A stretch of DNA of 48,677 bases, taken from the NCBI RefSeq assembly GCF_001194135.2, contig NC_069002.1, forward strand, positions 37,186,674-37,235,350, written 5' to 3'. The notes under the pieces are model-generated. The model was given only the letters and a program-made list of their open reading frames with translations, was not told the DNA's origin and ran no database searches. Position 1 is the first letter of the stretch; every line of letters begins with the position of its first letter. The translations under genes and the position numbers were made by a program. Positions 24,756 to 46,245 of this stretch are shown piece by piece. This DNA comes from Octopus bimaculoides (taxonomy: Eukaryota).

Positions 24756-24800
24756 TGTGTCTATAATGTTTAAAAAATTTTCAATTTCACTTTTCCTCAC

Positions 24801-27392: not shown

Positions 27393-27452
27393 CTGCAATG
27401 AGGAAAATATGGATGAGATTAAACCCACTCCTCACTCCTTTGCTCACATTCA

Positions 27453-28430: not shown

Positions 28431-28495
28431 CCCTTTGATTTACTTGGTAATTCTAGTTTAAACACAGATATATCATTAACAACACTTTTGTAGGC
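28431..28495 (-). CDS. CUL5: Cullin-5 coding exon 10
   Basis: tttttag|AYKSVVNDISVFKLELPSKSK(G)|gtatgt; 65 nt. Confidence 0.96.
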
Positions 28496-29172
28496 CTAAA
28501 AGAAAAAAAGAAAAAAAAAGGAACATTACTAAGAGAATATAATGGTTTCAAAGGAAAGCAACTTTAAGGGACCTCAGTATTCAACTGATACTTATTTCAT
28601 TGACCCAGGGAGGATGAAAAGCAAAGTCAACCTCAATAGAATTGGAACCCAGAATGTAAATGCCATTAAGCATTTTGTCTGACTTGCTAACAATCCTACC
28701 AGCTTGTCACATTTTTGCTAAGAATATAATAAAGGTTCTTCAAACAAACATTAGAAATTCAAAATAGGATTATAGTTTTTACCTCATATTTACAAATAAA
28801 ATACATTAAACATTTAGATCTACATTTGATCTCGATTGATACAGGCGCTTTATCCTAGGCCAACCAAAGCCTTGTGAATGGGTATGGTAGATATAAGCTG
28901 AAAGAAGCCTGTCATGTGTGTGTGTGTGTTTATTTTTGTGTTCTCCTCCCCCACTATTGCTACTTGACAACTAGTGTTGGTCTGTTTATCTTCCGATAAC
29001 ATTGCAGTGCTGCAAAAGAGACTGATAGAATTATAAAAACAAGTATTGTGGTAGATTTGTTTGACTAAAACCCTTCAAGAGGTGGTGCCAAGAATGGCAG
29101 CAGTCCAATGACTGAAACAAGTAAAAGATAAAAAGATAAACATAAACTGAAAATGGCAAATAGCAAACTTAC

Positions 29173-29280
29173 TTTGTCTCGAGAAGTAAGAAAACGGGGA
29201 TCATCTAGAAAGGCATCTTTGACTAATTTACTAAATCGGTTGAAAAGTTCCAAAAGTTGTTCAACATATTTCTCAGAATC
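29173..29280 (-). CDS. CUL5: Cullin-5 coding exon 9
   Basis: tag|DSEKYVEQLLELFNRFSKLVKDAFLDDPRFLTSRDK|gtaagt; 108 nt. Confidence 0.97.
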
Positions 29281-29663
29281 CTATAAAAAAAGAAAATGCA
29301 CATTGTTCAGAATACAAAATATAATAAATACATACAAAGACATACAATAAAATCATAAAATTTGTATATAATCCTTTGGCTGTGACCCTATGAGGTTTAT
29401 TTCCTCACAGCCCTTTTCTCCCACTTGCAGTCCACACATTTCTATCAATGTTGCAATATTTGGACCCCACAGGGGAAGAAGCTGTTTTCATCCTGTTGGT
29501 CAAAAGAGTCATCAACAACAGACATGACATCATCATCATCACTGCAATACTGGTTGCCAGCCAAGTGTTTTTTCATAAGGCCAACATTTTAACCAATAGA
29601 CCACACAGCAAAGTTGTTCAATACAGAAGTGAGAAACAGGAAACAAAACAGAAATGTACTCAC

Positions 29664-29794
29664 AGTGGTGATAGTTCTGGCAGCCGACATCATATCTGCT
29701 AAACCTTGGCTGACTATATGAGCTTCAAGATCATGTAACATTGGAGCAATTCCATCCACAACCCTATCCATAAGGCTGAACATCAAACGTAATT
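29664..29794 (-). CDS. CUL5: Cullin-5 coding exon 8
   Basis: tcag|(K)LRLMFSLMDRVVDGIAPMLHDLEAHIVSQGLADMMSAARTITT|gtgagt; 131 nt. Confidence 0.97.
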
Positions 29795-29994
29795 CTGAAA
29801 AACAAAATGGAAAAAAAAAAGAACTTTAAATGTATTTATGTTCAGCATTAAGAGACAGAAAGAAAATTTGGACATTTGTATAAAATGGAAAGATGGATGG
29901 TGATGATTTATTCAACTAAAACCCTTCAAGGCAGTGCTCCAGTATGGCCGCAGTCCAACGACTGAAACAAGTAAAAGAGAAAAGATAAATAGTT

Positions 29995-30160
29995 CAGATG
30001 TGGGCATGCGGTAAGAAGTTTGCTTCCTAATCACATGGTTCTGAGTTCAGTCCCACTGCATGGCACCTTGAGCAAGTGTCTTTTTCTGCTATAGCCTCAG
30101 GTTGACTAAAAGCCTTGTGGGTGGATTTTCTCTAGAGGGAAACTAAAAGAAGCCCATCAT
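29995..30160 (+). mobile_element. tRNA-derived SINE family A (representative plus copy)
   Basis: GGTAAGAAGTTTGCTTCC..GGTTCTGAGTTCAGTCCCAC..GGCACCTTGAGCAAGTGTC..GGAAACTAAAAGAAGCCC, ending in (AT)n. Other plus copies at about 12420-12500, 13350-13770 and 28850-29145. Confidence 0.75.
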
Positions 30161-30171
30161 ATATATCTATA

Positions 30172-30265
<94 letters not shown>

Positions 30266-30716
30266 TATGTGCATGTATGTTTGCTTGTATGTGTATGCCT
30301 GTATGTGTGTATGTATACGTCTCTCCCTGTCTTCACATTCCAGGGTAGTTGTAAACGAGTGTCACTGTCATACAAGCAGTGTCATTCATTTCTGATATTT
30401 TGTGAAAACATGTCTGGCCATGGGGAAGTATTACCTTGCTTGGGAAACAGGCGAGGTTTGGTGACAAGAAAGGCATCTGGTCGTAGAGTATCTGCCTCAA
30501 TAAACTCCATCCAACCAAAGCAATCATGGAAAAATGGAAGTTGTTGTTGATGATGATGATGATGATAATGATGATGATGATGATAGAATGATAGGAAGGT
30601 GAGGTGCATGAAATATAAATACAAATGCAATATACTGTAATGTGGTTAAAGTATAACATGAACAGGTTAGCAATGGTCTTTGGATGATGATGTTAGAAGG
30701 AAAAAGCAAAACTTAC

Positions 30717-30810
30717 TCTCCGTTTCGTTTGCTTTGATCATGCCAGCACACTCATTCAGAATGGTGTCCTTAAATGCTGTTACCAATACCTCAACACAGC
30801 AGTCAATTAA
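30717..30810 (-). CDS. CUL5: Cullin-5 coding exon 7
   Basis: cccag|LIDCCVEVLVTAFKDTILNECAGMIKANETE(K)|gtaagt; 94 nt. Confidence 0.97.
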
Positions 30811-30904
30811 CTGGGAAATGAAAAACAAAAAGAGTCATGAGAATAAACCGGCAGCTGTATTTGTAAAAGTGTGTGTATATATATTTTAATACTTTTGTAT
30901 ATGT

Positions 30905-31092
30905 GTCCAGTGGGTATTCCTATAAGAAACACGAGACAATGAAAGCTCAATTCCTTTGGAAACAATTCAAACTTTGTACAAGTCCATACCTCGTAGAATT
31001 CAAGCTGTAATTACTGCCAAACACGATCCTACCCGATATTAAATTTGTTTGAAATTTTAAGGTGTTTCCATTATTTTGTCCAACTCCTGTAT
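30905..31092 (+). mobile_element. Tc1 3'-end remnant
   Basis: LYKSIPRRIQAVITAKHDPTRY* followed by the terminus TTTTGTCCAACTCCTG-TA. Confidence 0.7.
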
Positions 31093-31164
31093 TACCTTGC
31101 ATGGAAACTGATGGGGGTTGGGAACAGGAAATAAATTACAGAATGTAGGTAGCTATGTACTCAC

Positions 31165-31391
31165 TGCTGACACTGACGGACAACACCAGCCAGTTTCTAG
31201 ATAACGCTTGGCTCGGCATTCTTCTTCTTTTAGCTTGGCATCAGCAAATCTCATGTAATTCTGTACTCCATTGGCCTGCAAGTACTGGGGCGCTTTCACT
31301 CGGTAAAATGATTCAGTGGCTTCCAAATAAGCCTTCTCAAAATTTTCGTGATATATTTTCAATTTGTCTTCAGCATCAGAACAAAGGTTCA
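31165..31391 (-). CDS. CUL5: Cullin-5 coding exon 6
   Basis: cag|(V)NLCSDAEDKLKIYHENFEKAYLEATESFYRVKAPQYLQANGVQNYMRFADAKLKEEECRAKRYLETGWCCPSVSA|gtgagt; 227 nt. Confidence 0.97.
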
Positions 31392-31743
31392 CTGAAGCAA
31401 AGAAGAATAGAAAGGAAAACTTAATTTGTGCTAATCAGGTAAAAACATAGAAGCAAAAGATTGAAGGCAATTATAGGGATGATGGTAATGGTGATGCTGG
31501 TAATAGATGCTATGACAAAAAAAATGTGGGTTTGCAATGGCTATGTCTCTAGAACGAACCGTTTTGATACCAACACATTGCCGTTTCTAGCAGGTTGAGC
31601 CCAGACATGGTTATTTATGTCTGTCTCCTGTATTAAACATTTAAAAAATTTTTGCTGAGTTGTTTTACCAAACATTTATCAAATAAACCAAACATTCGTA
31701 TTTGGGAAGTATTCCACGAAATTTGAAAAGAGAAATTACTCAC

Positions 31744-31885
31744 CATAGGACTCACGGACTCCAATAACGAGCTGAGAATTGAAGGCTTCTCCATTACGTT
31801 CTGAGTGAACCAGCTTCATGGCACTGTCTTGCAAGCGATGCTTGATGTTGTTGAATATACTTTGATTCCAGGTATCCAGCATCAT
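31744..31885 (-). CDS. CUL5: Cullin-5 coding exon 5
   Basis: tag|MMLDTWNQSIFNNIKHRLQDSAMKLVHSERNGEAFNSQLVIGVRESY(V)|gtgagt; 142 nt. Confidence 0.97.
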
Positions 31886-32804
31886 CTAGAACCAAATAAA
31901 AACAATATTGCTTATGAAATCTTAAAATCTTTGTCAGCAGATACAATAAAGCAATATTGAAGTTTTCTCACTTTATGATGCTCACAATGACCGCTACAAC
32001 AAACGAGCTTAAGGAATTTAAACTGCCCACAGAAAGTGAAGTACACACACATTAATGTATTAATGTGCAAGAAATAAAAAGATGAAAGAGTGATAGTTGT
32101 AATAAAGCCGGAGTGTTGGTGTGAGGTACAGAAATGTTAGCTTAAGATACTGAAAGCTCTTTGTCTTTCGCCTTCGGTTTTCTTTAATCTTTCTCTCTCT
32201 TCACTCTTCTGCTTCTCGCTTTCTCTCTGTGTGCCTCACTCCAATTCTTTCACTCACACACACACACACACCCTCTCACTTGTATCTCTTAGATCATGAT
32301 ATACTGAAAGCATATAGCTGAACACTACAGTTATTAAAATTCATCACTGATAAATCAAGCAATTTCTAATGCCTAGTTACTTTCCAACCATGCTGTATGT
32401 ATGTATATATATATATATATATATATATACATACATGTGGGTATCTTTTGTGTCTGTGTTTGTACCCCACCACTGCTTGACAACCAATGTTTTGTTTTAC
32501 GGCTCCATAACTTAGCAGTTCAGCAAAAAGAGACAAATAGAATAAGTAGCAGGCTTCAAAAAAGAAAAATAGGTACTAGGGTAGATTACTTTGACTACAA
32601 GTTCTTCAAGATGGTGCCCACCACGGCCGCAGTCTAATGACTGAAACAGATAAAAGAAAAGATAAAAGACAAACCATATTTCCTGATATTAGTCATGGCA
32701 GCAAAGTTACACTTCCAGAGTTGGCAATCGTATGATGTGATGGATAACACTCCAGTTCTTCTGATATTCCATAAATATTGAGGAAGCAAGAAAGAGCTTC
32801 TTAC

Positions 32805-32987
32805 CTTACGAACAATACTTTCATCTGCTTGGGTTTTCTTTGGCATCGTATTGTGAGCTTTTCCAGCTAAAGAAGCTTCCAGCTGACAGAAAGGCTTTGG
32901 TAAATAACCACACTGAGTGAAGAACTTGCCCCACTCAGCAATGTATGTTTTGAGAAGAGCTGATTCCTCTTGATGTTGAAGAACCCT
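32805..32987 (-). CDS. CUL5: Cullin-5 coding exon 4
   Basis: ttccag|RVLQHQEESALLKTYIAEWGKFFTQCGYLPKPFCQLEASLAGKAHNTMPKKTQADESIVRK|gtaaga; 183 nt. Confidence 0.97.
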
Positions 32988-33699
32988 CTGGAAGAATAAA
33001 GAAACATTAAAACTGAAAAAAAATCAGAATTCTGCAAAAAAATAAAACTAATCCTTTCTTCATCATTAAAAAAAAAGAGTAAAGACCCCTTCAGTCAAAA
33101 GTGACCAGGGGACTGCACCTAGAAAGTTACCCTCCCAGACACAAATCCGGACAAAGTTGTTTATGGAACAACCCTTTGCACATGGTTTTTCCCAAACCTT
33201 CACATCGCTTGCCCTGCTATTTGACACTTTCATATCACACAAAATGACCAGCCGCTAAGTTAAGAAATTTCTACAGTTTTTAATCGCTCTTCATTCTTTC
33301 ATTCATTTAACATGTCGTTGAGTTAAAATAACTTCCGAATTGTATCCCTTTAAATACTTGCCATAATTCTCATGTGTTCTCAACAATAATTCTTTATCGT
33401 AATTCACCCCACCTCCACCTACAATAAAGTCTCTGTCTGCCTCACTATTGTCTTTTTGCTGCTGCTGTTTCGATTTTCTTGTGGCGAAGCTAGCCTTTGT
33501 TTGTTCATGATGCACCCACCCTTTCCTGCTCCCACCACCAATACTGGAAATCCCTTCTCCCATGTCAACAATCTCTTCTTTTATACCGAAAACTCCTACA
33601 GGGCTCTGCCTCACTCCGGCACCAGAAGCCCTGCATACCTCTGTTCCTCCCTCCCCACCAGACCACCTGCCTTCTTCTCTCACTTCCCCCTCTCTCTAT

Positions 33700-33964
33700 A
33701 TATATAATGGACTAACTAAATAGCTGCCCATTTACTTATTTCCATGACTTTCATCACCAGATCCAACAACTTGATACCTCTGTAATTATTCCTATCTAAA
33801 GCGTCACCTTTACCTTTGAAGCAGTTGACTATGGTACAGTTCCACCAGTCATTGGGTATGACTCCAGGTATCACTTGATTGACTAGACTATAGCCTACAC
33901 CATCAGATATTTTAAGCATCCCAGCAGTGATTCCTGATGGACCGGGGGCTTTCCCAGTCTTCAT
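33700..33964 (-). mobile_element. RTE-type LINE fragment, same family as 37.4-38.9 kb
   Basis: MKTGKAPGPSGITAGMLK..IPNDWWNCTIVNCFKGKGDALDRNNYRGIKLLDLVMKVME. Confidence 0.88.
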
Positions 33965-34450
33965 ACCCTTAGTAGACGCCTATTCAACATGGATCGAGGC
34001 ATTCATGTGTCCTAATCATTTGACTGAAGCGGTAAAACGCAAGCTGCTGGAGGTCTTTGCTCGTTTTGGAGTGCCCACAGCTTTAGTATTGGACAACGGG
34101 CCTGAAACTCTTGCCATCAATGGGTTGCAGAAAGATCGAGATGCCTGCTTACGGTCCAGCATTTAACAGCACTGCTGAAAGGGCCATACAAATTGTGAAA
34201 GCTGCACTGAAGCATTTTGATTCAAAGACAGGGAATTTCAGCAACTACTTGAACAAAATTCTGTTCAACCATCGGGAATGCCTCAGGTGGTTGTAAATTA
34301 TCTGCAGCCAAAAAGTTAATGAAAAGACCATTGAGGGTTGCTCTAAGCCCATTCTTTGAAATAAGTGAGAATGTGATACACAACCCCCCCCACCCAACGT
34401 TCGACAAGGTTGCATCCAAGGCAAAATATGTGATACATGCCGAAAAGATG
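33965..34450 (+). mobile_element. Ty3/Gypsy integrase core fragment
   Basis: LVDAYSTWIEA..LLEVFARFGVPTALVLDNGPE..P..AFNSTAERAIQIVKAALK..LFNHR: an integrase DDE pattern with frameshifts. Confidence 0.82.
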
Positions 34451-34832
34451 GACCCTCCTTAATCCATGGATTAAGGAAGGTCATCCACTGCAGTTAGTGG
34501 CAGTTGAGCAACTGGCCCTGCTGAACACACGGGAACCAGAACTAGAATTGAGCACAACACCTGGCACAATGGTTCATGCTGAGTCCAAAAACGTGTCTGG
34601 TACCACAGTCCAAGCACAAGCATAATAATGATACAATTATTTTACTAAATTCTTCATTATTTTCAAAATTAACTGAAATAAAGGCAGTGTATTTTATCAG
34701 AAATATAGTAACAAAAGAATTACATAAAATTTCAAAAGAATAAATAAAACAGATTATAATTATAGGAATTGATAAAAATGAAAGAAAACAAGTTGGACAT
34801 TGAAAGTATAGCAAGAATCTGTTGTGGCTTAC

Positions 34833-34932
34833 AATTTGAGCTTGTCGTATAAATTCCAATATGTCATCTTGGAGTGCCTGGTACACCTTCTGGGGACCTT
34901 TTTCATCCCATAAACACACGGAGTGTACAGCC
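34833..34932 (-). CDS. CUL5: Cullin-5 coding exon 3
   Basis: ag|(W)AVHSVCLWDEKGPQKVYQALQDDILEFIRQAQI|gtaagc; 100 nt. Confidence 0.97.
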
Positions 34933-35019
34933 CTAGATTTGAAAATGAAAATGAAAATAAAACAGTATTATCTTTTACTTGTTTCAATCATGCTGGGATC
35001 CTGCCTTAACAAAGCTTTG

Positions 35020-35770
35020 AACTAACTCAAGCATCCCCTCCAACTGAACATGCTTTGGCTTTTATCAGACAAGAAAAATTTCTGCCAGGACCAGATGGTG
35101 AACACACAGAACAGCTGTTGGCTGGCCATGCTCACAAAACATGCACCGAGAGTGATAAAAAACAAACATCCAGTCAACATCATGGTGTTTGTAGTGATCA
35201 CTAGTGATGGCAACGTTATGCTTATATTCATCTTCCCACACAGCCTCAAACTCAACACGGAGGCCTACATCAAGTGCCTGGAGGAGGTAGTGCTGCCCTG
35301 GGTCAAGAGGGTAGAAGCTGGAACATCCTATGCCAGGCAAAAGGACTCTGCACCATGTCATACAAGCAGAACCCAGTGATGGCTGTCAGACAATCTCTGC
35401 AACCACATCACCCCTATCATCTGACAACCTAACTCCCCACACTGCAGCCCCCTTGATTATTATGTTTGGGACGTAGTTGAGTGAGAGACCAACAAAATTC
35501 CTTGTAACACCAAAGATGAACTGAAGGCAAGGATTATGGCAGCATTCACCAACTTAAACAAGGAGACTGGCTGTCCAGAAGAGTTGTAGGAGTTTCTGAA
35601 GCCGTCTGGAGGCCATGATTGAAACCAATGCCGATTTTATTGAATAAATTTACTCTTTAGTATTTCAAGATAACCTTATGTAATTTTGGTAAATATATCT
35701 GTTAAAATGAGATGTCAGTGTTATTTTCATTTTTGTGTAATTTAAAAGACAATTTATTCACCGCACCCTG
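35020..35770 (+). mobile_element. Tc1/mariner-superfamily (maT/DD37D-like) transposon, 3' portion
   Basis: DKKNFCQDQMVNTQN..KHPVNIMVF..YIKCLEEVVLPWV..QKDSAPCHTS..PNSPHCSPLDYYVW; ends in TIR ..ATTCACCGCACCCTG followed by TA. Confidence 0.85.
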
Positions 35771-36011
35771 TATATATATATATATGCACACACACAGACA
35801 CATAATCACCAAAGGTCTCAGTTACTTGTCATTGCCTCCACATATACACACACAAGTATTTTTTAGTTTCTATCTACCAAATCCACTGGTCCTAGTTTCC
35901 AATCAGTGGGACAGAACCGATACCCACATGGTTGGAATGCAAGTTTCTCAACTTATGCCTGTAATTATGGGTATATTATAATAAATTGATGCAGAAAAAA
36001 ATAAAACTTAC

Positions 36012-36118
36012 CAAAACAATTCTTGCCATTCAAATTTTGTCACCCTTTCTTGGCGTAAAAGTTTCAGAACTGTTGGGCGCATAGTAGGCCATTTTTCTTC
36101 AAATTGCGATTGCCCTTG
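36012..36118 (-). CDS. CUL5: Cullin-5 coding exon 2
   Basis: ttccatttcag|QGQSQFEEKWPTMRPTVLKLLRQERVTKFEWQELF(W)|gtaagt; 107 nt. Confidence 0.96.
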
Positions 36119-36549
36119 CTGAAATGGAAATGTGGTTTATTACAAATACATCTATGTCATTAGATAACTGGAAATTAATCAACTTTTAGTGAAAGTTAAT
36201 TACTTTAAAAATATATGTGTAATTTTGCGTTTTAATATTTCACTTAAGCATTGCAAGACTAACAACCTGGTGTAGAACTGTTGTGGTGATAGAAATTAAC
36301 ACCCTTGTGTGGTTAAAAGGTGGACTCGTTGAACTCTTATAAAGAGTAACGTGTCTCGTTGAGATGGGAAGAAGGCATTGGTGTCTCACATGCTGGTAGT
36401 TGGAAGTTATGCCTGTGAATGCATTGCTTCACTCCTGCTTCGTTAAAATCATTTATCTGCAACTCAGGATATAAAAGCAGTGATGAGATATTCGAAGCTT
36501 GCGTTGGACAGTCAAATATTTTGGTACGAAACCAAAGAAAAAATATGTT

Positions 36550-36790
36550 AACATGGAGGATTTATTGGCCTGCATAGCAACTGCATCAGCAACAGTTGCT
36601 GGAATTAATGTTGAAGAAGTTTGAAAGTACTTCAGGGTTGTTCATGCCAGATGCCATAGCAAACTCAATTGGAGGATTTGTTTATAATCCAAAAGAAGGT
36701 ATTACTTTCCCTGCATATTTTCCAAGATATGAAGAAATCTTCAAAGAAGACTGTAGCAATTGGACTGACGAGAAAAAAGTGCAACATAAA
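36550..36790 (+). mobile_element. Gypsy-like gag N-terminal fragment (K02A2.6-like)
   Basis: IANSIGGFVYNPKEGITFPAYFPRYEEIFKEDCSNWTDEKKV resembles the F-x-Y-D-P-x-x-G-x-T-F-x-x-W-x-x-R-Y-E-D-x-F..D-x-x-K-V motif of these elements. Confidence 0.65.
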
Positions 36791-37379
36791 AGACACCCAC
36801 CACATTCTTGGAGTGGATGCCTTTTAGGAAAGGCATGCAGCTGTAGAAACCAAATCAGACTGGAACCTGGTACAGCTCTCTGGCTTACCAGTTCTGGTCA
36901 AGCCTTCTTGTCCACACTAGCATGGAAAATGGATGGTAAATGATGAGGAGGAGGCGGATTCTTTCCTACTATAGGAACAAGGCCCAAAACTTGGGGGGGG
37001 GGGGCATTCAATTACATAGAACCCAGTCCTCACTCATCATTTAATGTCCACTTGCCATGTTGTCATGGGTTGGAAAGTTTGACAGAAACTGGCCAAATAG
37101 GGAGCTGCCCAGGTTCTAATTGTCTGTTGTGGCATGGTTTCTCTGGCTGGATGCCCTTCCTAATGACAACCACTTCACAGAGTGTACTGAGTGCTTTCTA
37201 TGTGGTACCAGCATGGGTGCTCTTATGTGGCACAGGCACAAGTGCTTTTTATGTGGCACCAACACTTGCAAGCTCCCCCAAAAAAGGGACTCTGTCGTAC
37301 ATGCACACTGATATCACCCATCCAATAGAGCAATGCTGGCTTCATTTCTTTGCATGTCCTCTGTAGCCATAGCCCATGT

Positions 37380-38950
37380 CTCACTGTAATATAGCATAGC
37401 TGTACGTACAGGCATTATTACAATCTACCTTTCAATCATAGGAAAAGGCCCCTTGTTACAAACAAAGGTGATAGGGTTCTGAACTATGGCCCAGCTTGCT
37501 CTTATTCTACCAACTATGCTTTCAGAACTTCCTCCTCTACTGTTAACTTGGTCACCTAGGTAACAGAATCTGTCTACTACTACTACTACTGGACATTTGA
37601 GGACATCTATTCTCTGTACATTCTTAGTGTTTATTGTACCTGCACATCTACCACACACAAAGACTGCTTTTTTTCTGTTAACCTTCTCGTGATACTGCTG
37701 CACCTATGTGTCCATAGCTTGCACTTGGTATACAGTGTGGAGTTTCTACCAACTCCTTTCCTACATATTGAACAGGGCCATCTTCCTGAAGGGATTGGAG
37801 ATATGTCTGTGTTCCTAATTACTAGGACTTTGGTCTTAGCTAAATTAACTTTAAGGCCCTTAGATTCCAGACCTTGCTTCCACACCTGAAATTCCCTCTC
37901 TAGTTCAGGGAGTGATTCAGTTATAAGAATAAGGTCATTAGCATAGGGACACTCCCAAGGGCAGCCAGTCTTAAACTCCTTTGTTAGAGCCTGGAGAACT
38001 ATGATAAACAAGAAGGGGCTGAGAAGTGATCTACTTGTACACTAAATTCATTGCTATGGTCGTTGCCAACCTTTACCTTACTGACAGCATTTCTGTACAC
38101 AGCTGTACAGCCCTCATCAAACACTCATCTATTGATAGCTTTTAGAGTGAACATCAGATGAGGGAGTGAGGGACCCTGTCAAAGGTTTCCTCCATGTCTA
38201 CAAAAGCCAAGTACAGAGATTTATTCTTGGCTTCTCCCAGGCACGAAACCAAACGACATCTCATCCAGTTTAACTCCCTTCCTAATATCTGTAACTTTCA
38301 TGACCTGGTCCAACAATTTAATACTTCTGTAATTATTTCTGTCCAAGGCATCACCTTTTCCTTTGTAGCAGTTGACGGTAATGTTGCTACACCAGTTGTG
38401 TATGACTCCCTCGTGGATTAACAATATAGGTGACTAACCCATACCCCACTTGGCCAGATATTTTCATCATGTCAGTGATGATCCCTGATGGGCCAGGGGC
38501 ATTCCCTGTCTTCATATCCTTAATTGCTCTATCTACCAAGCTACTGTCAATTCAGATAGCTGGTTCCTCTGTTGCATCGACATTAGACAGACTCTCCTTC
38601 TCCCATGCATTCTCTACTTTTACCAACCATCTCATAGTAGCATTTCCAAGTTTTTTTCTTCTTTGCAGAATCACTAACTGCAAGTGTACCATCATCCATG
38701 TGAACACACTTCTCTCCTACATCATAATTGTCTTTCACTCACTATCATGCAATCCGAAACACCTCAAGCTGCTGGCCCTCATCTCACAGAACACTGGCAA
38801 ACTTCTTCCTTTCCACTTCTCTCCTGGCGAAATATACCCATCTCCTAACCTCCCATCTAGTTATTTGATATAGTTCCCTGCTCCTACCACTGTTCCAGTC
38901 CCATTTCTTCACTCTAATAGCCGTCTACTACACTGTTCCACCACCATGTC
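37380..38950 (-). mobile_element. RTE-type LINE, decayed RT region (CUL5 intron 1)
   Basis: KTGNAPGPSG..KGKGDALDRNNYRSIKLLDQVMKV..GFVPGRS; FIIVLQALT..GCPWE..YANDL..GLKVNLAKTKVL..WPCSICRKGVG; RFCYLGD; many stops. Confidence 0.88.
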
Positions 38951-39289
38951 ACATTAGATCTGGTAGGGACTTTGTACCAGTCAAAAATTTGGTCATTAAG
39001 TTGTTCCATAGAAACCTCCAGTTGTTCTCTATATTATGCTTCTATATCATTGCCAGTACCACCAGACTGGCCCTCGTGCTGGTGGCACATAAAAGCACCC
39101 ACTACACTCTCGGAGTGGTTGGCGTTAGGAAGGGCATCCAGCTGTAGAAACTCTGCCAGATCAGATTGGAGCCTGGTCCAGTCATCTGATTCGCTAGTCC
39201 TCAGTCAAACCGTCCAACCCTTGACCCATACAAGCGTGGAAAAAAAGGATGTTGACAGAACACAAAATAAATCTTTTTTTAATATTTAA

Positions 39290-39511
39290 CCCTTTTGATA
39301 CCAACCCATCTGAAACTGCCTCTGGCCCTGTGGTACAAATTTCTTGTTTTCAAAAGTTCTGAATTAAAATCTTCCACCAAACCTTAGTCATAATTTATGT
39401 TCCTAACACTAGCTTAATGATAGCTAAGTTATTTTACTAAATTCTTTGTTATATTTAAAATTAATTGAAAGAAACACAGAGCATCTCAACAGAAATATGG
39501 TATCAAAAGGG
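39290..39511. mobile_element. piggyBac-type MITE (222 bp)
   Basis: Perfect 14-bp TIRs CCCTTTTGATACCA, with TTAA on both sides (39286-39289 and 39512-39515). Confidence 0.85.
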
Positions 39512-39581
39512 TTAAACACCTGTACTGCTGTTGAAGCATTGCATTGGAAAATGATATTGAACATGTTTATCTCGCACTTAA

Positions 39582-39785
39582 CCCTTTAGCATTCAGATTG
39601 CTCTATCAAATGTAATGCTTATTTATTTACATTAACAAAAACTAGTCATTCATTACCTTGTAGCTTTGAGTTTTCAATGTTATGATTATTTATTTTTAGA
39701 ATAATATTGTAAGGTAGGTGTGAGAGGCTGGATCTGGCCAGTTCGATTATTTTGGCCAGATATGGCCGGTTTAAATGATAAAGGG
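39582..39785. mobile_element. piggyBac-type MITE, second family (204 bp)
   Basis: TTAA|CCCTTTAGCATT...AATGATAAAGGG|TTAA. Related internal sequence occurs reversed at about 14175-14630. Confidence 0.75.
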
Positions 39786-41206
39786 TTAAAGTGGATGATA
39801 TCAGTGATACAAACATGATTGCTTTTATGCACCATGAGTCCATAGGAGAGGTCCTCTCATGATAAACAATGCAATAGTCTGTGTTCTAACATCTAGTGGG
39901 AGATAAATACTGCTTCTGTTGCTAGTTATTATTATTTGAACATATTTTGCATATATAAATGTCAAACAAAACAGACTTCAGTAGTCACGAAAATTCTCCT
40001 CACTCGTATTAAGTACAGTAGCAGATGCATGTAAAATGTTAAGAACAAAAATCAATATTTTCCTTTTATATGCTACCATAATTAAGTGTTAGAATATGCA
40101 GGAGCTCGTTCTGTGTTGCCTAATAGTGAATGGTTGAGAGATATCCCTCTCCTCAGATAGGGGCATCAGTCAGCTGCAAAGTTTACTGGTTGAAGAAATT
40201 CAATTCAGTGTTGGAAATTAGCAAAACATTTGCTGGCTGTAGTCTCCTTGCTACTGACAGTAGTAAACTATACTCATTTTAGGGAACAGGACCATGGACA
40301 GTAAAGGCTAAAGTAGATGGGTCCTCCATTCATTTCGATAATGAGCTTTCCAGAAGTTCAATCAACAGAACTACATAATCATTGAATCATAGTGTAGGCA
40401 GTTGAGTATTCCACAATATAACATAAAGAAAAAAAAGTGGTTGTTGTTGAGACAGGGTGTGTGTGGGTGTGAAAGATAGATAGGTAGACTGTTGTCACCA
40501 TAGTAACTAGTGAGACTTTCACTGGATGACAGTCTACTATTAAAAGAAAATACATGCATAATTAACAGATATTATTACAGGCAGCATAGCGATGGACTAA
40601 GTCCTATTATAACATAAATGTCAGGCAGAACCATTAAGACACTGCATGTAACAAAACTAGGCCCATGGATTACATTCCATCCAATGGGCCTCCAGTGTTT
40701 TTTTTTTTCTAACCAGTTTCACTCACAAATTTTGGGACAACCCAAGGCTATGGTAGAAGCAAATTGATGACCGGATATGAGCTGTTGACACTTTAGAACC
40801 AGGCATGAGCAAATTCTGACTGGTATGCCTAACAAAGAAATTACCTTGAATTTTTTTTTTTCTTAGTGGTGTGGCTCACCTGATGAGTCATGTCTCATGC
40901 AGCCTGCTTCTCCAAAAAGGTTGCCCATGCCTGCTTTACATAATAAGTCAATGCCCTGATTACCTAGACGTTACTGTTCTAGAATTGATTACACTTATAG
41001 GAAAGAATCCCAACCATTAGCTAATACACAGACAAATATTATTTCTGACTCAGAAAGTCAAGACGAGATACATTGGTGAAGAGCTGCATAAATAAGGTCT
41101 GTAACAATGTAACATTAGAAGTGTAAAAAAACAAAACATCTGATTGAAAGACAATTGATGGTTTAGTGATGGCAACAACTGTGACAACAACATGCAGTTT
41201 TAAAAA

Positions 41207-41436
41207 CAGTGGTTCTCAACTGGGGTCCAAGATTTTGTTGTTAAAATTTATCTGCAATAAATTGGTTATACTTCTACAATACACAAAATAGTTCAACAAT
41301 TTTTTTTATACAATTCCTAATAAAATTTATAAAAATATAATTTTGTTAAACACCGAATGACTAGGGAAGGGGGGTTCAAGGTAAGTAAAATAGGAATCAA
41401 AAGAGTCCACAGGTAAAAAGTGGTTGAGAAACACTG
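41207..41436. mobile_element. hAT-type MITE
   Basis: TIRs CAGTGGTTCTCAAC / GTTGAGAAACACTG with subterminal GGGGTCC-like motifs. Confidence 0.7.
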
Positions 41437-41824
41437 ATTTGAAAGCTGTTCTGAAAACCATTTGTCAGAATTAGTAGTGGTAGATCAATACCATGAAGGA
41501 TTTAGTCATATTTCTTTAAATTTTGAGCTCAAAATCTGCTGGAGGACAATTGACTTCACATCCTTTGGAAGTCATTGAAATAAGGAATGAAAAACAGGGG
41601 TCAATTCAATCAATTATAGTCTTCCTCAAAATGTTTGGCCTTGTGATAATTTTTTTGTCTTTTACTTGTTCCAGTCATTAGACTGCAGCCATGCTGGGGC
41701 ACCACCCTGAAGAATTTTTTTCAGTCAAATGAATTGACTCCAGTTTTTATTCTATCACTGTCTTTTGCCAAACTGTTAAGTTACAGAAGTAAATACATCA
41801 ACACCAGTTGTCAAGTGATAGTGT

Positions 41825-41889
<65 letters not shown>

Positions 41890-44137
41890 ACAACAAATTT
41901 CTTTCAGTTTACATCTACTAAATCCACTCACAAGGCTTTGGTAAACCCAAGGCTATAGCAGAAGACGCCTAAAGTGCCATGCATTAGGATTGAACCTGGA
42001 ACCATGTGGTTAGGAAGCAAGCTTCTTACCACACAGCCATGCCTGCAAAAATCAATGATTAACCTTAATAATGGTCCTTGCTTATCTGCATTAAATATCA
42101 TAGTTAAAACTTTGTTGAATTTATGAAATATATGCACTAAATCAGTGCTAAAGAGCAAAATCTTAAACCAAACTGCATAAATCAAAATGAATGAGGGATG
42201 GAACTTTCCACGGTGAGTCAGTGAATATTTTAAGAAAAGGAAATATAGGAACATTAATAAATAACTCAGACAGACAAAACACACACGACATGGCTATTTT
42301 CAATATCATTTCGTGTTACACTTGCCACACAATTTCCGAATGCCAAACATTACATACAAAGGCACAGGCATGCCTGTGTGATAACAAGTCTTGCTTCCCA
42401 ACCACACCATGAGCATGCGTTTTCTAATGTAGACCCAGGCTGCCCAAAGCCTTGTGAATTTGGTAGAGAGAAACAGGAAGAAGCCTGTCATATAAATAGA
42501 TGGGTGTGTGTTTGTGTGACTGTCTCCTTGCTTTGACTTCAGGTGATAGTTGTAAACGAATGTCACCACCATGAAACTGGTGTCCGTCGTCGTCTCCACT
42601 CTTCTATGAAAATATGTCTGGTCATGGGAAAATTTTACCTTACACGGAAAGGGCGAAAGTTGACGAGAGGAAGGGAACCTGGCTGTAGTAAGTCAGTCTC
42701 AACAAATTCCGTCTGACCTATTCTGGCATGGAAAACTGACGTTAAACGACAACGATTATTTTATATATATATATATATATATATATGCCTTCTCTAAACG
42801 ACCCCTAATCCTTTACACCATTAGTCATGTGATACAAGTGTAGTTACTGCCTATTAAACGATGTCCAAAGACCAGAGTTCCTTTTATATTTGCACACTAA
42901 TAAATAATAATTCAAGAAGCAATAACTGTTTTATTAATCTAAACGCATACAACAACAAAAATGCGAAGAACAACCTTTAGTTAAAAGAAAAAAATAAACG
43001 TGAAGATATGACCAGGACACGAAGATCGAAATCATAAAGTGAGAATTGGGCATGCTGAAAGGTTTAAGATCTGGATATAAAATATGAATTAAACTTACTT
43101 GTGAAATGAATATTTTCTTAAATATATAATATAAATTATTTTGTTCTTGTAAAAGTACAAATGTAACAAGAGAAGACTAATCAATTATACTCTTTCTTTG
43201 ACAATACTAGAAATTCCTGCATACATCAAGTTTGCACTGAGAAGAATTTGCTTATGTCTAATGGTCCAGATAACAATGTTTAAGGAAATAAAAAGAAAAA
43301 CTATCTTGTTTCATAAGTACGGGAATGAAAAAGCGAGAAATGTTTATTTAATATTAAATCATCAAATATTTTATTTTATGATGGTCAAGATTGTATAGAA
43401 GGATTAAAGAATGTTGTTACTTGTTTATCTAGAGTGAAATCTGAGCGGTTAAATTTGTTTTTTTATTTTTCAACCTTTTCTCAATGCAACTTCAATTAAA
43501 TGTCTCCAGCCAATTAAGACAATAGATCACTCATAAGTACGATCGGTTTTCCTGTCGGGGGAAACACTAATCGGAAATAATCGATATGAAGTAATTAATA
43601 AAATGACATTAAAAGAACACATACTAAAAATTTGCATTTTTTTCTTTCAATATTTTATAAACAAAATATCTACTTTAATCTTACTTCGAACAGTGGAGTG
43701 ATGCGGGAGGTGAGAGAATTTTAACGGAATATAAGCAGTTCCAATTTATTTTTCTCTTTGTGAGAATTGGCAATTGTACAAACTATGGCCTAAACGGTAA
43801 ATAATATAAAAGCGCTGTGAAATAAGACATAAACCGTGCATAGAAACTGCAAATATTTCATTTCATAATTAAGAAGAATTTCTATTTAATGTAATATAGT
43901 GGAATTGGTTTGTGTAACTAAGTCTTTTATTTGAGAAGTGGGGTCAGATTTGGTAACTTTGGACCATATAACATTTTAGTTGGAAAATAGTGTTTTGCTA
44001 AATCTGCTACAAAGTATATAACAAGTTAATGATTGTCATTTCTTGTCAAATATATGATTAAAAATGAAAAATACCAGCTGTACTACCTCGAATGATATAT
44101 ATAACACGAAGATAGAAATGCAAATTTCAGGTTATTA

Positions 44138-44171
<34 letters not shown>

Positions 44172-44894
44172 ACCTCGAAAATTACAAGGTGACTACAAGA
44201 ATCAACCATTATAACAGCCACAAGTGAAGACATGTGAGAGACTTATGTAAATATTTCAAAACTGAGAGGTAATATTTACGTATGCACAAAGGATAAGTCA
44301 AAAGGTATAAAAAGATAAACAAAAGAGAGAGAAAGGGAAAAAACGATTGTCTTATTCTTTCTCATATTGATATTTCATTTTTTTCCCACGAACACTCAAG
44401 TGTGTAATTTTATATAATGAAAATATAAACTCTATAAATTATAGAGAAGAAAGCAAAAAACAAAAAGAAAAACTGCGGTCCATTTTAGTTTTTACGAAGG
44501 AAAATATTTGGGAGCGATATTTGAAAAGATATAACTGTGCTAGGGATAAAACGGTAGATTAGAGATCAAATGTGATTTATATTATAGCAGTAAGTATATA
44601 ATAATCCGGACACAAGTAAATATAATGCACATGCTTCGGGGGTATTTAGTAAGCTGAACGAGTCAAACGTGTATTGTTGTAGTTTGATGAGGAATATTGA
44701 AAGCAAGTCGGGACCCAAAGTTGAAAGCGTTGAGTTTTACGGCAGTTTTAAAATAAAATTGAAATTAAAAATAGCTAGATAAAAACAGAATTAAGCCTTG
44801 TAATGCACAGAGAGAAATAGGGCAAGAATGGAAAGGAATAATCAGGTAAAATGTCCTACAAGAATCTGGAAGAGGCGAAGATCATTGGACTCAC

Positions 44895-44909
44895 CTTTAA
44901 CATCGCCAT
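44895..44909 (-). CDS. CUL5: Cullin-5 coding exon 1 (MAMLK)
   Basis: Minus strand reads aacaatATGGCGATGTTAAAG|gtgagt: good start context and a consensus donor. Phase 0 joins exon 2 in frame, giving MAMLK|QGQSQFEEKW (human, from memory: MATSNLLK|NKGSLQFEDKW). Confidence 0.85.
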
Positions 44910-44950
44910 ATTGTTTCTCGAGAGAATCTCGCGAGAACTGACAAAACAGC
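44910..44950. promoter_or_regulatory. 41-nt spacer between the divergent CUL5 and VBP1 start codons, with TCTCGCGAGA (44927-44936) and TCTCGAGAGA (44916-44925)
   Basis: Read directly. TCTCGCGAGA is the palindromic CGCG element (attributed to BANP, formerly Kaiso/ZBTB33) of vertebrate housekeeping promoters. Both ATGs sit in YY1-like ATGGCG contexts. Confidence 0.75.
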
Positions 44951-45013
44951 ATGGCGGCCGACAAGGCAGACGAAGAGCAGAACCACAGCGGAATCCCCAA
45001 GGCAGACTTTGTG
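44951..45013 (+). CDS. VBP1: Prefoldin subunit 3 / VHL-binding protein 1, coding exon 1 (later exons not found in the window)
   Basis: aacagcATGGCG...: MAADKADEEQNHSGIPKADFV|gtaggt. HSGIPKADFV matches the HLGIPEAVFV motif of human VBP1/PFDN3, and the phase-0 donor falls right after FV, where I recall the human exon 1 ends. Based on 21 aa only. Confidence 0.8.
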
Positions 45014-46245
45014 GTAGGTTACAGTATTTCTAGGCAATGGAAACGATTCTTATCTTCAATTTGGGTTACGCTTGAGTGTTTCCAATGCAGTAATTACTTA
45101 CTGTTTTGTAAATATTTAATATTTTTTTTCGTTTCAAGATAAGGAAGAGGAACTAAAAAGAGAAAATAAGAAGATAACTTGTCACACACAGCTTCTATCG
45201 ATTATTTAACCTAATAATTAAATATTCTCTCTTAATAATATTTTCCTCTTGATAATTTCGATATTTTCTGAGTAAGCGTAAGAAAATAATTATCAAAGAT
45301 GATTAAATACTGCACGGGAACTCAATGGAGTCAATCTTAAACCATAAATGTTTAAAAAATGTTTTACATGAAGAAACATAAAAAAAACCCCAATAAGTTT
45401 ATTATGTAAATTTTTATTGATCTGCCATAAAAGGAATATTTATTTCAGATTGACCCTTTTCTCTTCCATTTAGAGCCCACCAGAAACATTACGTTTCCCA
45501 ATTCACCTTTTAATATTGAAACATTTTCCCATTCTGGTCTTGACGCTTGTTGATGAATCTTACCTGCGACTCGTTTCCTTCAATATAAAAGTTGACAATT
45601 AAAGTTTAAATATAAAATTTTACTATCGATCCCTTAATTATTCCTTCTGTCTCCACGAGAATTTAAGCTGATGCCGTTTTCAGTTGATTAGAAAAATATT
45701 TCTAATTTGAACATTGATGATGATTCATATTTCATGTTCAGAACGTCGAAGCTATTTTCACTCTTCCATCGCTTTTAATTCGAGTTTAATTTTTCCGAGA
45801 TTTTATTTATAGAATTTTGTTACCTCTCCATCTTTCATTATTTTTTTTTCTGTTCACAAGTAGATTGAAATAATATATTTTAAAATACTGTTGACCTTCA
45901 CATAACTTACGATATATTTTAAATTCCTGTGTAGTTTAATTCGTTAGATTCGTATAGGTTTTTATCGGTTCATACTCAAGATTCATTTATACCATATATA
46001 TCTCTGTAAAGGAAATTTCATTCAAAAACAAGTATTTTTAATGAAAGTTCTGAGAAAGCCAAGTCGCGTGGGGTGGATGGAGGCACACTTCTATATTTAT
46101 CTTTTAAAAAAATCGAATTCTATAACGTTAAAACGTTCAAATTTTTGGTTTCTGTTCTCTGGAAGCTGCTATAATGGCTGGAAGAGAGTTTATGTGCTTA
46201 AGATTTCTAAGCTTTTTTGTGTCTCTCTCTAGGGGTGAAAAATGG

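What the first reader, a model, noticed from the sequence alone, without database searches (positions are those of the whole stretch)
44895..45013. CUL5 and VBP1/PFDN3 start codons are back to back, only 41 nt apart
Seen in the sequence: the CUL5 ATG (minus, 44909) and the VBP1-like ATG (plus, 44951) are separated by 41 nt. Each begins a tiny first coding exon (15 and 63 nt) followed by a long intron. Inference: two normal 5'UTRs and a core promoter cannot fit in this space. Either both mRNAs have near-leaderless 5'UTRs driven from one shared element, or they overlap 5'-to-5', so that each gene's promoter lies in the other's exon 1 or intron 1. That would make this a ~120-bp unit that is promoter, two UTRs, two start codons and two splice donors at once, inside a TE-expanded genome. 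It would be extremely compact even among bidirectional pairs. I do not know whether this pairing has been described.
Basis: partly seen in the sequence, partly recalled or inferred. Interest (0 to 1): 0.85.

Follow-up and report, generated by a model that had tools for sequence, protein, structure and literature searches.

The report
Ultra-compact shared CUL5–prefoldin-3 promoter
In the octopus genome the housekeeping genes CUL5 and prefoldin subunit 3 (VBP1) start back to back only 41 bases apart, around a known palindromic promoter motif; this is an ancient, very tight but otherwise ordinary shared two-way promoter, not a new kind of element.

Summary
The window is Octopus bimaculoides (100% match to CM046622.1). 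The minus-strand ATG at 44909 opens a 15-nt exon (MAMLK) that joins CUL5 exon 2 at 36118. The assembled 778-aa protein is identical to RefSeq octopus CUL5. The plus-strand ATG at 44951 opens a 63-nt exon whose 21 residues match the N-terminus of octopus prefoldin-3 exactly.

It holds the window's only exact TCTCGCGAGA, the vertebrate "CGCG element"/BANP motif known to drive bidirectional transcription.

The head-to-head pair is present in every bilaterian locus checked except a scorpion: amphioxus, an acorn worm, a brachiopod, an annelid, a gastropod, four other cephalopods and a millipede. ATG-to-ATG spacing ranges from 41 to 1123 nt.

RNA-seq contigs from two other cephalopods fuse the spliced CUL5 and spliced VBP1 mRNAs into one contig. 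At k=31 this requires at least 30 nt of 5'-to-5' transcript overlap.

About 2.5% of human genes have 5'-overlapping head-to-head partners, and human CUL5 is itself listed as a CGCG-element gene. I class this as a new member of a known kind, of moderate interest.

The parts
44895..44909 (-). CUL5 coding exon 1 (ATGGCGATGTTAAAG = MAMLK), phase 0
   Evidence: The protein is 100% identical to RefSeq octopus CUL5. N-termini MA(A/V)MLK or MLK are conserved in arthropod, mollusc and other CUL5s. The spliced junction is seen in Sepia RNA contigs.
44889..44894 (-). CUL5 intron 1 splice donor GTGAGT
36119..44888 (-). Rest of CUL5 intron 1 (whole intron 36119-44894, 8,776 nt)
20797..36118 (-). CUL5 exons 2-18 with stop codon. 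Exon 2 is 36118-36012; the last exon is 20991-20797.
   Evidence: tblastn with human and Sepia CUL5, plus splice-site solving.
44910..44950 (.). 41-nt spacer between the two start codons: attgtttctcgagagaatctcgcgagaactgacaaaacagc
   Evidence: In O. sinensis the spacer is 42 nt. A 70-nt block (about 44868-44936) covering the proximal part of CUL5 intron 1, CUL5 exon 1 and the first 27 nt of the spacer, both palindromes included, is identical between the two octopuses.
44927..44936 (.). Perfect palindrome TCTCGCGAGA (CGCG element / BANP-type motif)
   Evidence: It is the only exact match in 48.7 kb. Exact plus 1-mismatch matches total 2 (this site and its neighbour), against 0.07 expected by chance. 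There is exactly one copy, always in this spacer, in O. sinensis, Argonauta, Sepia, Batillaria and Lingula loci and in 16 cephalopod RNA contigs. It is invariant in the 6-species alignment.
44916..44925 (.). Degenerate second copy TCTCGAGAGA, containing the 8-bp palindrome TCTCGAGA at 44916-44923
   Evidence: The aligned position holds CTCGCGGCAGA in Argonauta, CTCGGCAGA in Sepia and TCTCGCGCCGGAGA in the second cephalopod.
44951..45013 (+). VBP1/PFDN3 coding exon 1 (21 aa)
   Evidence: The GIP.A.FV|EDV motif is conserved across animal prefoldin-3 proteins.
45014..45019 (+). VBP1 intron 1 splice donor GTAGGT; the intron continues past the window end
44947..44958 (+). TISU/YY1-like start context CAGCATGGCGGC (11/12 to SAASATGGCGGC)
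   Evidence: It is the only match with 1 mismatch or fewer in the window. The consensus is taken from PMC3177215.
44902..44913 (-). Weaker TISU/YY1-like context at the CUL5 start, CAATATGGCGAT (9/12)
   Evidence: Amphioxus CUL5 has 12/12 and Saccoglossus 11/12.
44936..44941 (-). Initiator-like TCAGTT abutting the palindrome. An A+1 at 44939 would give a 30-nt CUL5 leader. This is a lead only.
   Evidence: Read from the sequence. TCAnn-TCTCGCGAGA is shared by both Octopus species, Argonauta and Batillaria but not Sepia.
44950..44952 (-). Out-of-frame upstream ATG on the CUL5-sense strand, created by the CATG palindrome at the VBP1 start

Best explanation
The 121-bp stretch 44895-45013 is one compact, shared bidirectional promoter-plus-leader unit for two housekeeping genes. 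CUL5 is a cullin-RING ubiquitin-ligase scaffold. VBP1/PFDN3 is a prefoldin chaperone subunit.

At its centre sits a TCTCGCGAGA palindrome plus a degenerate second copy. This is the same element that drives bidirectional, TATA-less transcription in vertebrates. Two inverted ATGGCG (TISU/YY1-like, strong-Kozak) start contexts flank it.

The palindrome lies only 17 nt from the CUL5 ATG and 14 nt from the VBP1 ATG. It therefore cannot sit 20-70 nt upstream of two diverging start sites, as it does in mammals. Instead initiation is dispersed and the two short leaders cross. Each mRNA starts on the far side of, or within, the palindrome. The element is then transcribed into both 5'UTRs, and the two mRNAs are complementary over tens of nucleotides at their 5' ends.

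Shown: the gene models, the motif, its conservation, the bilaterian age of the pair, and at least 30 nt of transcript overlap in two other cephalopods.

Inferred: that Octopus behaves the same way, that the palindrome is the driving element, and that a BANP-like factor reads it.
For: Gene models.

Motif:
- It is the single exact hit in the window; exact plus 1-mismatch matches total 2 against 0.07 expected.
- There is one hit per orthologous locus, always in the spacer, and it is invariant in alignment A1.
- Human CUL5 is in the published list of genes with a TSS under 500 bp from a CGCG element (PMC6192621 S2 File).
- In taxa with wide spacers the motif stays 12-25 nt (or about 25-45 nt for degenerate copies) from the CUL5 ATG.
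- Local CpG observed/expected is 0.7-1.4 at 44400-45100, against 0.375 for the whole window.

Known function: the element alone drives bidirectional reporters. The human POLR1C/YIPF3 pair has divergent TSSs 30 nt apart flanking one element (PMC6192621).

Overlap:
- Sepia pharaonis Logan RNA contigs L006 and L007 carry spliced CUL5 (778 aa) and spliced VBP1 (186 aa) head to head. They are collinear with genome L005 across the 121-nt unit.
- L008-L014 run from spliced VBP1 through antisense CUL5 exon 1 for 270-484 nt.
- In a second cephalopod, L015-L019 are merged in the same way. L015 also stands for five further similar contigs that were not displayed, so 13 contigs carry this CUL5.
- L021 shows a CUL5 leader of at least 51 nt that includes the motif. 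L020 shows an adapter-tagged fragment end at -80, inside VBP1 exon 1.
- Logan assembles with k=31 and discards k-mers seen only once (PMC12424806). A join therefore needs at least 30 nt present in RNAs of both genes.
Against: - No octopus transcript or TSS data could be reached. The overlap is extrapolated from decapodiform relatives.
- De Bruijn contigs need only 2 reads per k-mer, so the overlap could come from minor start sites.
- The strandedness of the libraries is unknown. The intron-ward extensions in L008-L014 could be CUL5 pre-mRNA.
- A CUL5 leader starting beyond 44952 would carry an out-of-frame uATG.
- The near-perfect TISU context at VBP1 points to very short leaders.
- The mammalian distance rule for the element (20-70 nt upstream of the TSS) is not met.
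- The presence of a BANP orthologue in octopus was not tested.
Confidence: 0.6

Rival explanations
1. Near-leaderless, non-overlapping mRNAs. Both dominant start sites lie inside the 41-nt spacer. Leaders are about 5-30 nt and are translated through TISU-type cap-proximal initiation. The palindrome and two inverted YY1/TISU sites act as the whole promoter.
For: - The VBP1 start CAGCATGGCGGC matches SAASATGGCGGC at 11/12 and is the only match with 1 mismatch or fewer in 48.7 kb.
- TISU genes have a 12-nt median 5'UTR and basic cellular functions (PMC3177215).
- TISU-like contexts are conserved at both genes in amphioxus (12/12 and 11/12) and Saccoglossus (11/12 and 10/12).
- Both ATGs have A at -3 and G at +4.
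- The uATG at 44952 penalises longer CUL5 leaders.
- A TCAGTT initiator-like site would give a 30-nt CUL5 leader.
Against: - Merged spliced contigs in two cephalopods require the two leaders to sum to at least 73 nt (Sepia, 43-nt spacer) or at least 84 nt (second species, 54-nt spacer).
- CUL5 leaders of at least 51 nt, and probably 80 nt, are seen directly.
- ATGGCG follows simply from the common Met-Ala N-terminus, so part of the TISU match is expected.
- The CUL5 context is only 9/12.
Confidence: 0.25
2. Two separate promoters, each embedded in the other gene. The main VBP1 start site lies hundreds of nucleotides upstream in CUL5 intron 1, and/or the main CUL5 start site lies in VBP1 intron 1. 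The spacer is then plain 5'UTR rather than promoter.
For: - Seven Sepia VBP1 contigs from at least five run series continue collinearly with the genome for 270-484 nt upstream of the VBP1 ATG into CUL5 intron 1. They do not break at the CUL5 splice branch.
- A 70-nt block reaching 27 nt into CUL5 intron 1 is identical between two Octopus species.
Against: - Such leaders carry several uATGs: at -104, -160 and -174 in Sepia, and at -100, -123 and -148 in the window.
- Contig ends coincide with a T-rich low-complexity stretch, not a defined start.
- The 390-nt ATG-free stretch on the CUL5-sense strand in the window is not conserved in O. sinensis or Sepia.
- This model does not explain why the only conserved non-coding block across six species is the palindrome.
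Confidence: 0.1
3. Artefact: either one of the two mini-exons is not the real first coding exon, or the merged RNA contigs are assembly chimeras.
For: A 5-aa exon cannot be validated by homology search alone. Gene models at this junction are demonstrably wrong in the Batillaria, Owenia and Sepia genome annotations.
Against: - The MAMLK|QGQ junction is present in RNA contigs.
- Both mini-exons are conserved in sequence and position in 10 further species.
- Both O. vulgaris CUL5 isoforms start MAMLK.
- Merged contigs recur in independent runs of two species and match the genome base for base.
Confidence: 0.03

Closest known systems
CGCG-element (TCTCGCGAGA, BANP/'Kaiso-type' motif) bidirectional promoters of vertebrate housekeeping genes, e.g. 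human POLR1C/YIPF3 and DENR (Mahpour et al. 2018, PMC6192621; BANP structures PMC11472053, PMC10206803)
   Same: - An identical 10-bp palindrome with a tandem degenerate copy.
- TATA-less, housekeeping genes and a head-to-head coding pair.
- A locally non-depleted CpG patch.
- Human CUL5 itself is listed among CGCG-element genes.
   Different: - In mammals the element lies 20-70 nt upstream of each divergent TSS, inside a GC-rich CpG island.
- Here it is 14 and 17 nt from the two ATGs, in DNA of about 46% GC. In cephalopod RNA contigs it is transcribed into the leaders.
- The element was described as 'conserved in vertebrates'. I found no report of it in invertebrates.
- Factor binding and methylation sensitivity were not tested.
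5'-overlapping head-to-head protein-coding gene pairs (Trinklein et al. 2004 as summarised in PMC10887517)
   Same: Two coding genes on opposite strands whose 5' ends overlap. This applies to about 23% of human divergent pairs under 1 kb apart, which is 2.5% of all genes.
   Different: - Here the start codons themselves, not just the TSSs, are 41 nt apart.
- Each first coding exon is tiny (15 and 63 nt) and followed by a 7-9 kb intron.
- The pairing is bilaterian-old, whereas vertebrates have separated the two genes.
[quoted passage not shown]
   Same: An ATGGCGGC start context with -3 purine and +4 G in genes of basic protein metabolism. A very short space is available for a leader.
   Different: Leader length is unknown in octopus. 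Relatives show leaders of at least 51-80 nt for CUL5. The CUL5 context is only 9/12. YY1 dependence is untested.
Conserved bilaterian microsyntenic gene pairs (own knowledge: Irimia et al. 2012 Genome Res; Simakov et al. 2013 Nature)
   Same: The same two unrelated genes are kept adjacent and divergent in deuterostomes, lophotrochozoans and a myriapod.
   Different: Many such pairs are thought to be held by regulatory elements of one gene lying inside the other ('bystander' model). This pair is two housekeeping genes held at a shared promoter. I found no paper naming it, though supplementary tables of those studies were not searchable.

Membership tests
Bidirectional (head-to-head) promoter gene pair | Two genes on opposite strands with 5' ends less than 1 kb apart | tested here: met
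   The ATGs are at 44909 (-) and 44951 (+), 41 nt apart. NCBI gene calls start at the same positions.
Bidirectional (head-to-head) promoter gene pair | The intervening DNA drives transcription in both directions | not testable with these tools
   This needs a dual-reporter or deletion assay. The only support is indirect: the motif's known activity in vertebrates.
Bidirectional (head-to-head) promoter gene pair | The arrangement is conserved in other species | tested here: met
   ATG-to-ATG spacing in nt: O. sinensis 42, Argonauta 72, Sepia 43, second cephalopod 54, Batillaria 52, Owenia 55, Lingula 259, Saccoglossus 215, Branchiostoma 227, Chamberlinius 1123. It is absent within 10 kb in the scorpion Centruroides.
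CGCG-element / BANP-motif promoter | Consensus TCTCGCGAGA with an intact CGCG core and TCT/AGA flanks in the promoter | tested here: met
   Located at 44927-44936 and the sole exact hit in the window; exact plus 1-mismatch matches total 2 against 0.07 expected.
CGCG-element / BANP-motif promoter | The element lies 20-70 nt upstream of divergent TSSs, between them | tested here: not met
   Only 17 and 14 nt separate the element from the two ATGs. TSSs that far away would exclude both start codons. In cephalopod RNA contigs the element lies inside the CUL5 leader. The distance rule comes from PMC6192621.
CGCG-element / BANP-motif promoter | It resides in an unmethylated CpG island | tested here: inconclusive
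   CpG observed/expected is 0.84-0.97 with GC 0.46-0.47 at 44800-45099, and 0.7-1.4 over 44400-45100, against 0.375 window-wide. This is a small non-depleted patch, not a vertebrate-grade island. Methylation state is not available.
CGCG-element / BANP-motif promoter | It is bound by BANP (BEN domain) and activity is lost on mutation or methylation | not testable with these tools
No binding data are available.
TISU short-5'UTR genes | SAASATGGCGGC spanning the start codon | tested here: inconclusive
   VBP1 scores 11/12, the only match in the window with 1 mismatch or fewer. CUL5 scores 9/12. Part of the match follows from Met-Ala codons.
TISU short-5'UTR genes | A 5'UTR of about 5-30 nt (median 12) | not testable with these tools
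   No octopus TSS data are available. In a related cephalopod, CUL5 leaders of at least 51 nt exist, which argues against exclusively short leaders.
5'-overlapping head-to-head transcripts | RNAs from the two strands share sequence at their 5' ends | tested here: met
   Met in Sepia pharaonis and a second cephalopod. Spliced CUL5 and spliced VBP1 lie in single k=31 contigs from several independent runs. Not tested in Octopus itself.
Cullin-5 orthologue | Full-length cullin architecture and orthology to CUL5 | tested here: met
   778 aa, 100% identical to RefSeq octopus cullin-5. HSPs to human CUL5 span the protein at about 57-93% identity. The gene call carries Pfam Cullin, Cullin_AB and Cullin_Nedd8.
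Prefoldin subunit 3 (VBP1) orthologue | Exon 1 is spliced to prefoldin-alpha-type exons | tested here: met
   The 21-aa exon matches the N-terminus of XP_014781407.1. Exons 2-6 are located downstream in L029, outside the window. The spliced form is seen in Sepia and second-cephalopod RNA contigs.

The most novel reading that the evidence does not exclude
The CUL5-VBP1 unit is a conserved 'crossed' bidirectional promoter. A single CGCG palindrome flanked by two inverted TISU/YY1-like start contexts is transcribed into both leaders. The two mRNAs therefore always carry mutually complementary, palindrome-containing 5' ends. This obligate antisense or shared-element coupling, rather than mere proximity, would be what has kept a ubiquitin-ligase scaffold and a chaperone subunit welded together since the bilaterian ancestor. 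It would also extend the BANP/CGCG promoter system, so far described only in vertebrates, to protostomes, with a different element-to-TSS geometry.
Probability: 0.15. Interest if true: 0.6.

Novelty: new member of a known kind. Interest (0 to 1): 0.35.

Why it matters
- It gives a clean, very small (about 120 bp) natural test case for how one palindromic element can serve two genes when there is no room for two conventional core promoters.
- The TCTCGCGAGA/CUL5 association holds in cephalopods, a gastropod and a brachiopod, and human CUL5 is listed among CGCG-element genes. The element has so far been described as conserved in vertebrates.
- It adds a bilaterian-wide head-to-head microsyntenic pair that vertebrates have broken up.
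- Practically, this tight junction misleads automatic annotation. The CUL5 or VBP1 models are wrong in at least three public genomes.
- None of this overturns current understanding. Bidirectional and 5'-overlapping promoters are common.

Tried and rejected
Octopus CUL5 and VBP1 proteins occur only in genome records, so no octopus leader sequence was obtained.
2. I considered a 390-nt ATG-free stretch on the CUL5-sense strand (44953-45342; 0.14% of shuffles have none) as a sign of a long CUL5 leader. I rejected it because O. sinensis and Sepia have uATGs there.
3. Four Sepia contig 5' ends cluster at L005 9719-9728. I considered this as a VBP1 TSS but did not rely on it, because a T-rich low-complexity tract lies just upstream.
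4. The alternative VBP1 first exon from the O. vulgaris model P0242 lies in VBP1 intron 1 and has stop codons in O. bimaculoides. It is not relevant to the junction.
5. Literature searches for CUL5+VBP1 synteny and for TCTCGCGAGA in invertebrates found nothing.
6. Rfam, tRNA and Pfam scans of the window found only a reverse-transcriptase fragment.
7. The scorpion locus shows CUL5 exon 1 (MAAMLK) but no VBP1 exon and no motif nearby.

Full report
**1. The observation**

- On the minus strand, ATGGCGATGTTAAAG (44909-44895, MAMLK) is followed by GTGAGT.
- On the plus strand, ATG at 44951 opens a 63-nt exon (MAADKADEEQNHSGIPKADFV) that ends at 45013 before GTAGGT.
- The two start codons are separated by 41 nt (44910-44950).

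**2. Are the gene models real?**

tblastn with human CUL5 found 17 further coding exons on the minus strand, from 36121 down to 20800. I used a transcript-derived Sepia CUL5 as a guide. Every exon junction then resolved to a canonical GT-AG pair — uniquely, except the first and last junctions, where one candidate was clearly the better splice pair. The 18 exons give a 778-aa protein.

That protein is 778/778 identical to P0367, the cullin-5 shared by O. bimaculoides (XP_014781406.1), O. sinensis and O. vulgaris.

The five-residue first exon is also supported independently:
- CUL5 N-termini in arthropods, molluscs and other animals read MA(A/V)MLK or MLK, followed by [DQ]KGQ..FE.KW.
- Sepia RNA-seq contigs contain the spliced MAMLK|QGQSQFEEKW junction.

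The plus-strand exon is identical to the first 21 residues of octopus prefoldin subunit 3 (P0243, P0241), which continue ...FV|EDVENFMK. The GIP.A.FV|EDV boundary is conserved throughout animal prefoldin-3.

The window itself is O. bimaculoides chromosome CM046622.1, with 13,727/13,727 identical bases. NCBI's gene calls there begin at exactly these two ATGs. VBP1 exon 2 lies about 7.1 kb downstream, outside the window. CUL5 intron 1 is 8,776 nt. Both O. vulgaris CUL5 isoforms begin MAMLK.

**3. What the spacer contains**

The spacer reads attgttTCTCGAGAgaaTCTCGCGAGAactgacaaaacagc.

TCTCGCGAGA (44927-44936) is the only exact occurrence in 48.7 kb. The only 1-mismatch copy sits next to it, and 0.07 matches are expected by chance.

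This 10-mer is the vertebrate "CGCG element". In vertebrates it has these properties (PMC6192621; PMC11472053 and PMC10206803):
- It is a palindrome and is methyl-sensitive.
- It is BANP-bound.
- It is enriched at TATA-less housekeeping promoters.
- It is sufficient to drive bidirectional reporters.

The window is strongly CpG-depleted (observed/expected 0.375), but 44400-45100 is not (0.7-1.4). That fits a small unmethylated promoter patch.

The VBP1 start CAGCATGGCGGC matches the TISU consensus SAASATGGCGGC at 11/12. It is the only match in the window with 1 mismatch or fewer. The CUL5 start scores 9/12.

**4. Relatives**

| Species | Group | ATG-to-ATG spacing (nt) |
|---|---|---|
| O. bimaculoides (window) | cephalopod | 41 |
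| O. sinensis | cephalopod | 42 |
| Sepia pharaonis | cephalopod | 43 |
| Batillaria | gastropod | 52 |
| unnamed second cephalopod (RNA only) | cephalopod | 54 |
| Owenia | annelid | 55 |
| Argonauta | cephalopod | 72 |
| Saccoglossus | hemichordate | 215 |
| Branchiostoma | amphioxus | 227 |
| Lingula | brachiopod | 259 |
| Chamberlinius | millipede | 1123 |

A scorpion (Centruroides) has CUL5 exon 1 but no VBP1 within 10 kb.

The hit tables also place CUL5 and VBP1 on the same scaffold in at least 17 lophotrochozoan species and a myriapod. The divergent pair therefore dates to the bilaterian ancestor. From my own knowledge, vertebrates have separated the genes: human CUL5 is at 11q22 and VBP1 at Xq28.

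The exact palindrome is present once per locus, always in this spacer, in all five cephalopods, in Batillaria and in Lingula. Owenia, amphioxus and Saccoglossus carry split or degenerate versions.

Where the spacer is wide, the element stays next to CUL5. In Lingula it is 24 nt from the CUL5 ATG and 225 nt from the VBP1 ATG.

Human CUL5, but not VBP1, is in the published list of genes whose TSS lies within 500 bp of a CGCG element. The element therefore looks like an ancestral CUL5 promoter element that VBP1 shares.

**5. Where do the transcripts start?**

I could not reach octopus transcript data. Logan RNA-seq assemblies of two other cephalopods are informative instead.

In Sepia pharaonis:
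- Contigs L006 and L007 contain the complete spliced CUL5 CDS and the complete spliced VBP1 CDS head to head. They are collinear with the genome across the 121-nt unit.
- Seven further contigs from several run series join spliced VBP1 to 270-484 nt of collinear upstream sequence. That sequence passes through antisense CUL5 exon 1 into CUL5 intron 1.

In a second cephalopod:
- Five displayed contigs are merged in the same way, and one of them stands for five further similar contigs that were not displayed.
- One CUL5 contig starts at -51 and includes the palindrome in its leader.
- One contig carries an Illumina adapter tail fused at -80. That position is inside VBP1 coding exon 1. It marks a recurrent fragment end and possibly a CUL5 5' end.

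Logan uses k=31 and drops k-mers seen only once. Splicing fixes the strand of each flank. A join therefore requires at least 30 nt that are present in RNAs of both genes.

With spacers of 43 and 54 nt, the two leaders must sum to at least 73 and at least 84 nt. So 5'-to-5' overlap is real in these species, at least for part of the transcripts. The data cannot tell which start sites dominate.

**6. Mechanism**

In mammals the CGCG element sits 20-70 nt upstream of each of two diverging TSSs. Here it is 17 nt from one ATG and 14 nt from the other. That geometry is impossible if these ATGs are used.

The best-supported picture is a crossed arrangement. Initiation is dispersed on both sides of, or within, the palindrome. 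The leaders are short and run across it. The element is therefore transcribed, and the two mRNAs are complementary at their 5' ends. I put this at about 0.6.

Rivals:
- **Near-leaderless TISU-type mRNAs without overlap, about 0.25.** This is supported by the TISU matches, which are conserved even in amphioxus (12/12 and 11/12), and by the out-of-frame uATG at 44952 that longer CUL5 leaders would contain. The merged contigs argue against it.
- **Embedded promoters far inside each other's first intron, about 0.1.**
- **Artefact, about 0.03.**

**7. Comparison with known systems, and novelty**

Head-to-head pairs under 1 kb apart account for about 11% of human genes, and 23% of those overlap at their 5' ends. 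The human POLR1C/YIPF3 pair has TSSs 30 nt apart around one CGCG element. The octopus unit belongs to that kind.

What is less usual:
- The start codons themselves are 41 nt apart.
- The element-to-TSS geometry cannot follow the mammalian rule.
- The gene pair and the CUL5-motif association are bilaterian-old.
- The motif has been described in the literature as conserved in vertebrates. I found no invertebrate report and no paper on the pair.

I rate it a new member of a known kind, with interest 0.35.

Noticed in passing
L001 10001-10105 and 8900-9050; L024 6001-6324; L005 / P0249: Public gene models are wrong at this compact junction. The Batillaria CUL5 model has an N-terminal extension that is the antisense of VBP1 exon 1, and its VBP1 model lacks exon 1. 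The Owenia CUL5 (808 aa) and VBP1 (219 aa) models overlap each other. The Sepia genome CUL5 model (761 aa) lacks the MAMLK exon that Sepia RNA contigs show.
   Followed up: partly
PMC6192621 S2 File (no window coordinates): Human CUL5 is listed among genes whose TSS lies within 500 bp of a CGCG element; VBP1 is not. The motif appears to have stayed with CUL5 after vertebrates split the pair.
   Followed up: partly
window 9278-9387, 18986-19861, 27453-27689: There are three assembly gaps (runs of N). TA/CA-rich low-complexity sequence follows the second gap (about 19862-20330). The third gap is inside a CUL5 intron.
   Followed up: no
window 10223-10624 (+): A 133-aa ORF hits Pfam RVT_1 (reverse transcriptase, E=1e-15). 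It is a degraded retroelement fragment downstream of the CUL5 3' end.
   Followed up: no
window 47052-47111; L004 12145-12231: The alternative first exon of the O. vulgaris VBP1 model P0242 lies in VBP1 intron 1. It is intact in O. sinensis but has two stop codons in O. bimaculoides, so it is probably not a conserved coding exon.
   Followed up: partly
window 44953-45342 (minus strand): A 390-nt stretch has no ATG on the CUL5-sense strand. It is the longest such gap in the window apart from an N run (0.14% of shuffles have none). It is not conserved in O. sinensis or Sepia, so it is probably chance.
   Followed up: yes
L020 1-22: This Logan RNA contig begins with the tail of an Illumina adapter (cagacgtgtgctcttccgatct), fused 80 nt upstream of the CUL5 ATG and inside VBP1 exon 1. 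It marks a recurrent fragment end that may be a CUL5 5' end.
   Followed up: partly
P0246 (Logan, 521 aa; Sepia VBP1 cluster): A K/E/S-rich 335-aa sequence is fused in frame to VBP1 from about codon 7 of exon 1. It could be an assembly chimera or an alternative upstream exon.
   Followed up: no
L003, L004, L029 downstream of VBP1; L026, L027 and L028: The gene next to VBP1's 3' end is a DNA polymerase lambda-like gene in Octopus and Argonauta. In Saccoglossus and amphioxus an SNF2 + BRCT helicase gene flanks the pair, on the CUL5 3' side in Saccoglossus and on the VBP1 3' side in amphioxus. Wider synteny around the pair may also be conserved.
   Followed up: no
L025 5480-5900: In the millipede the 1.1-kb CUL5-VBP1 spacer has no CGCG element. 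It holds several TATCGATA/ATCGAT (DRE-like) motifs, which suggests the shared promoter's motif was replaced in arthropods.
   Followed up: no
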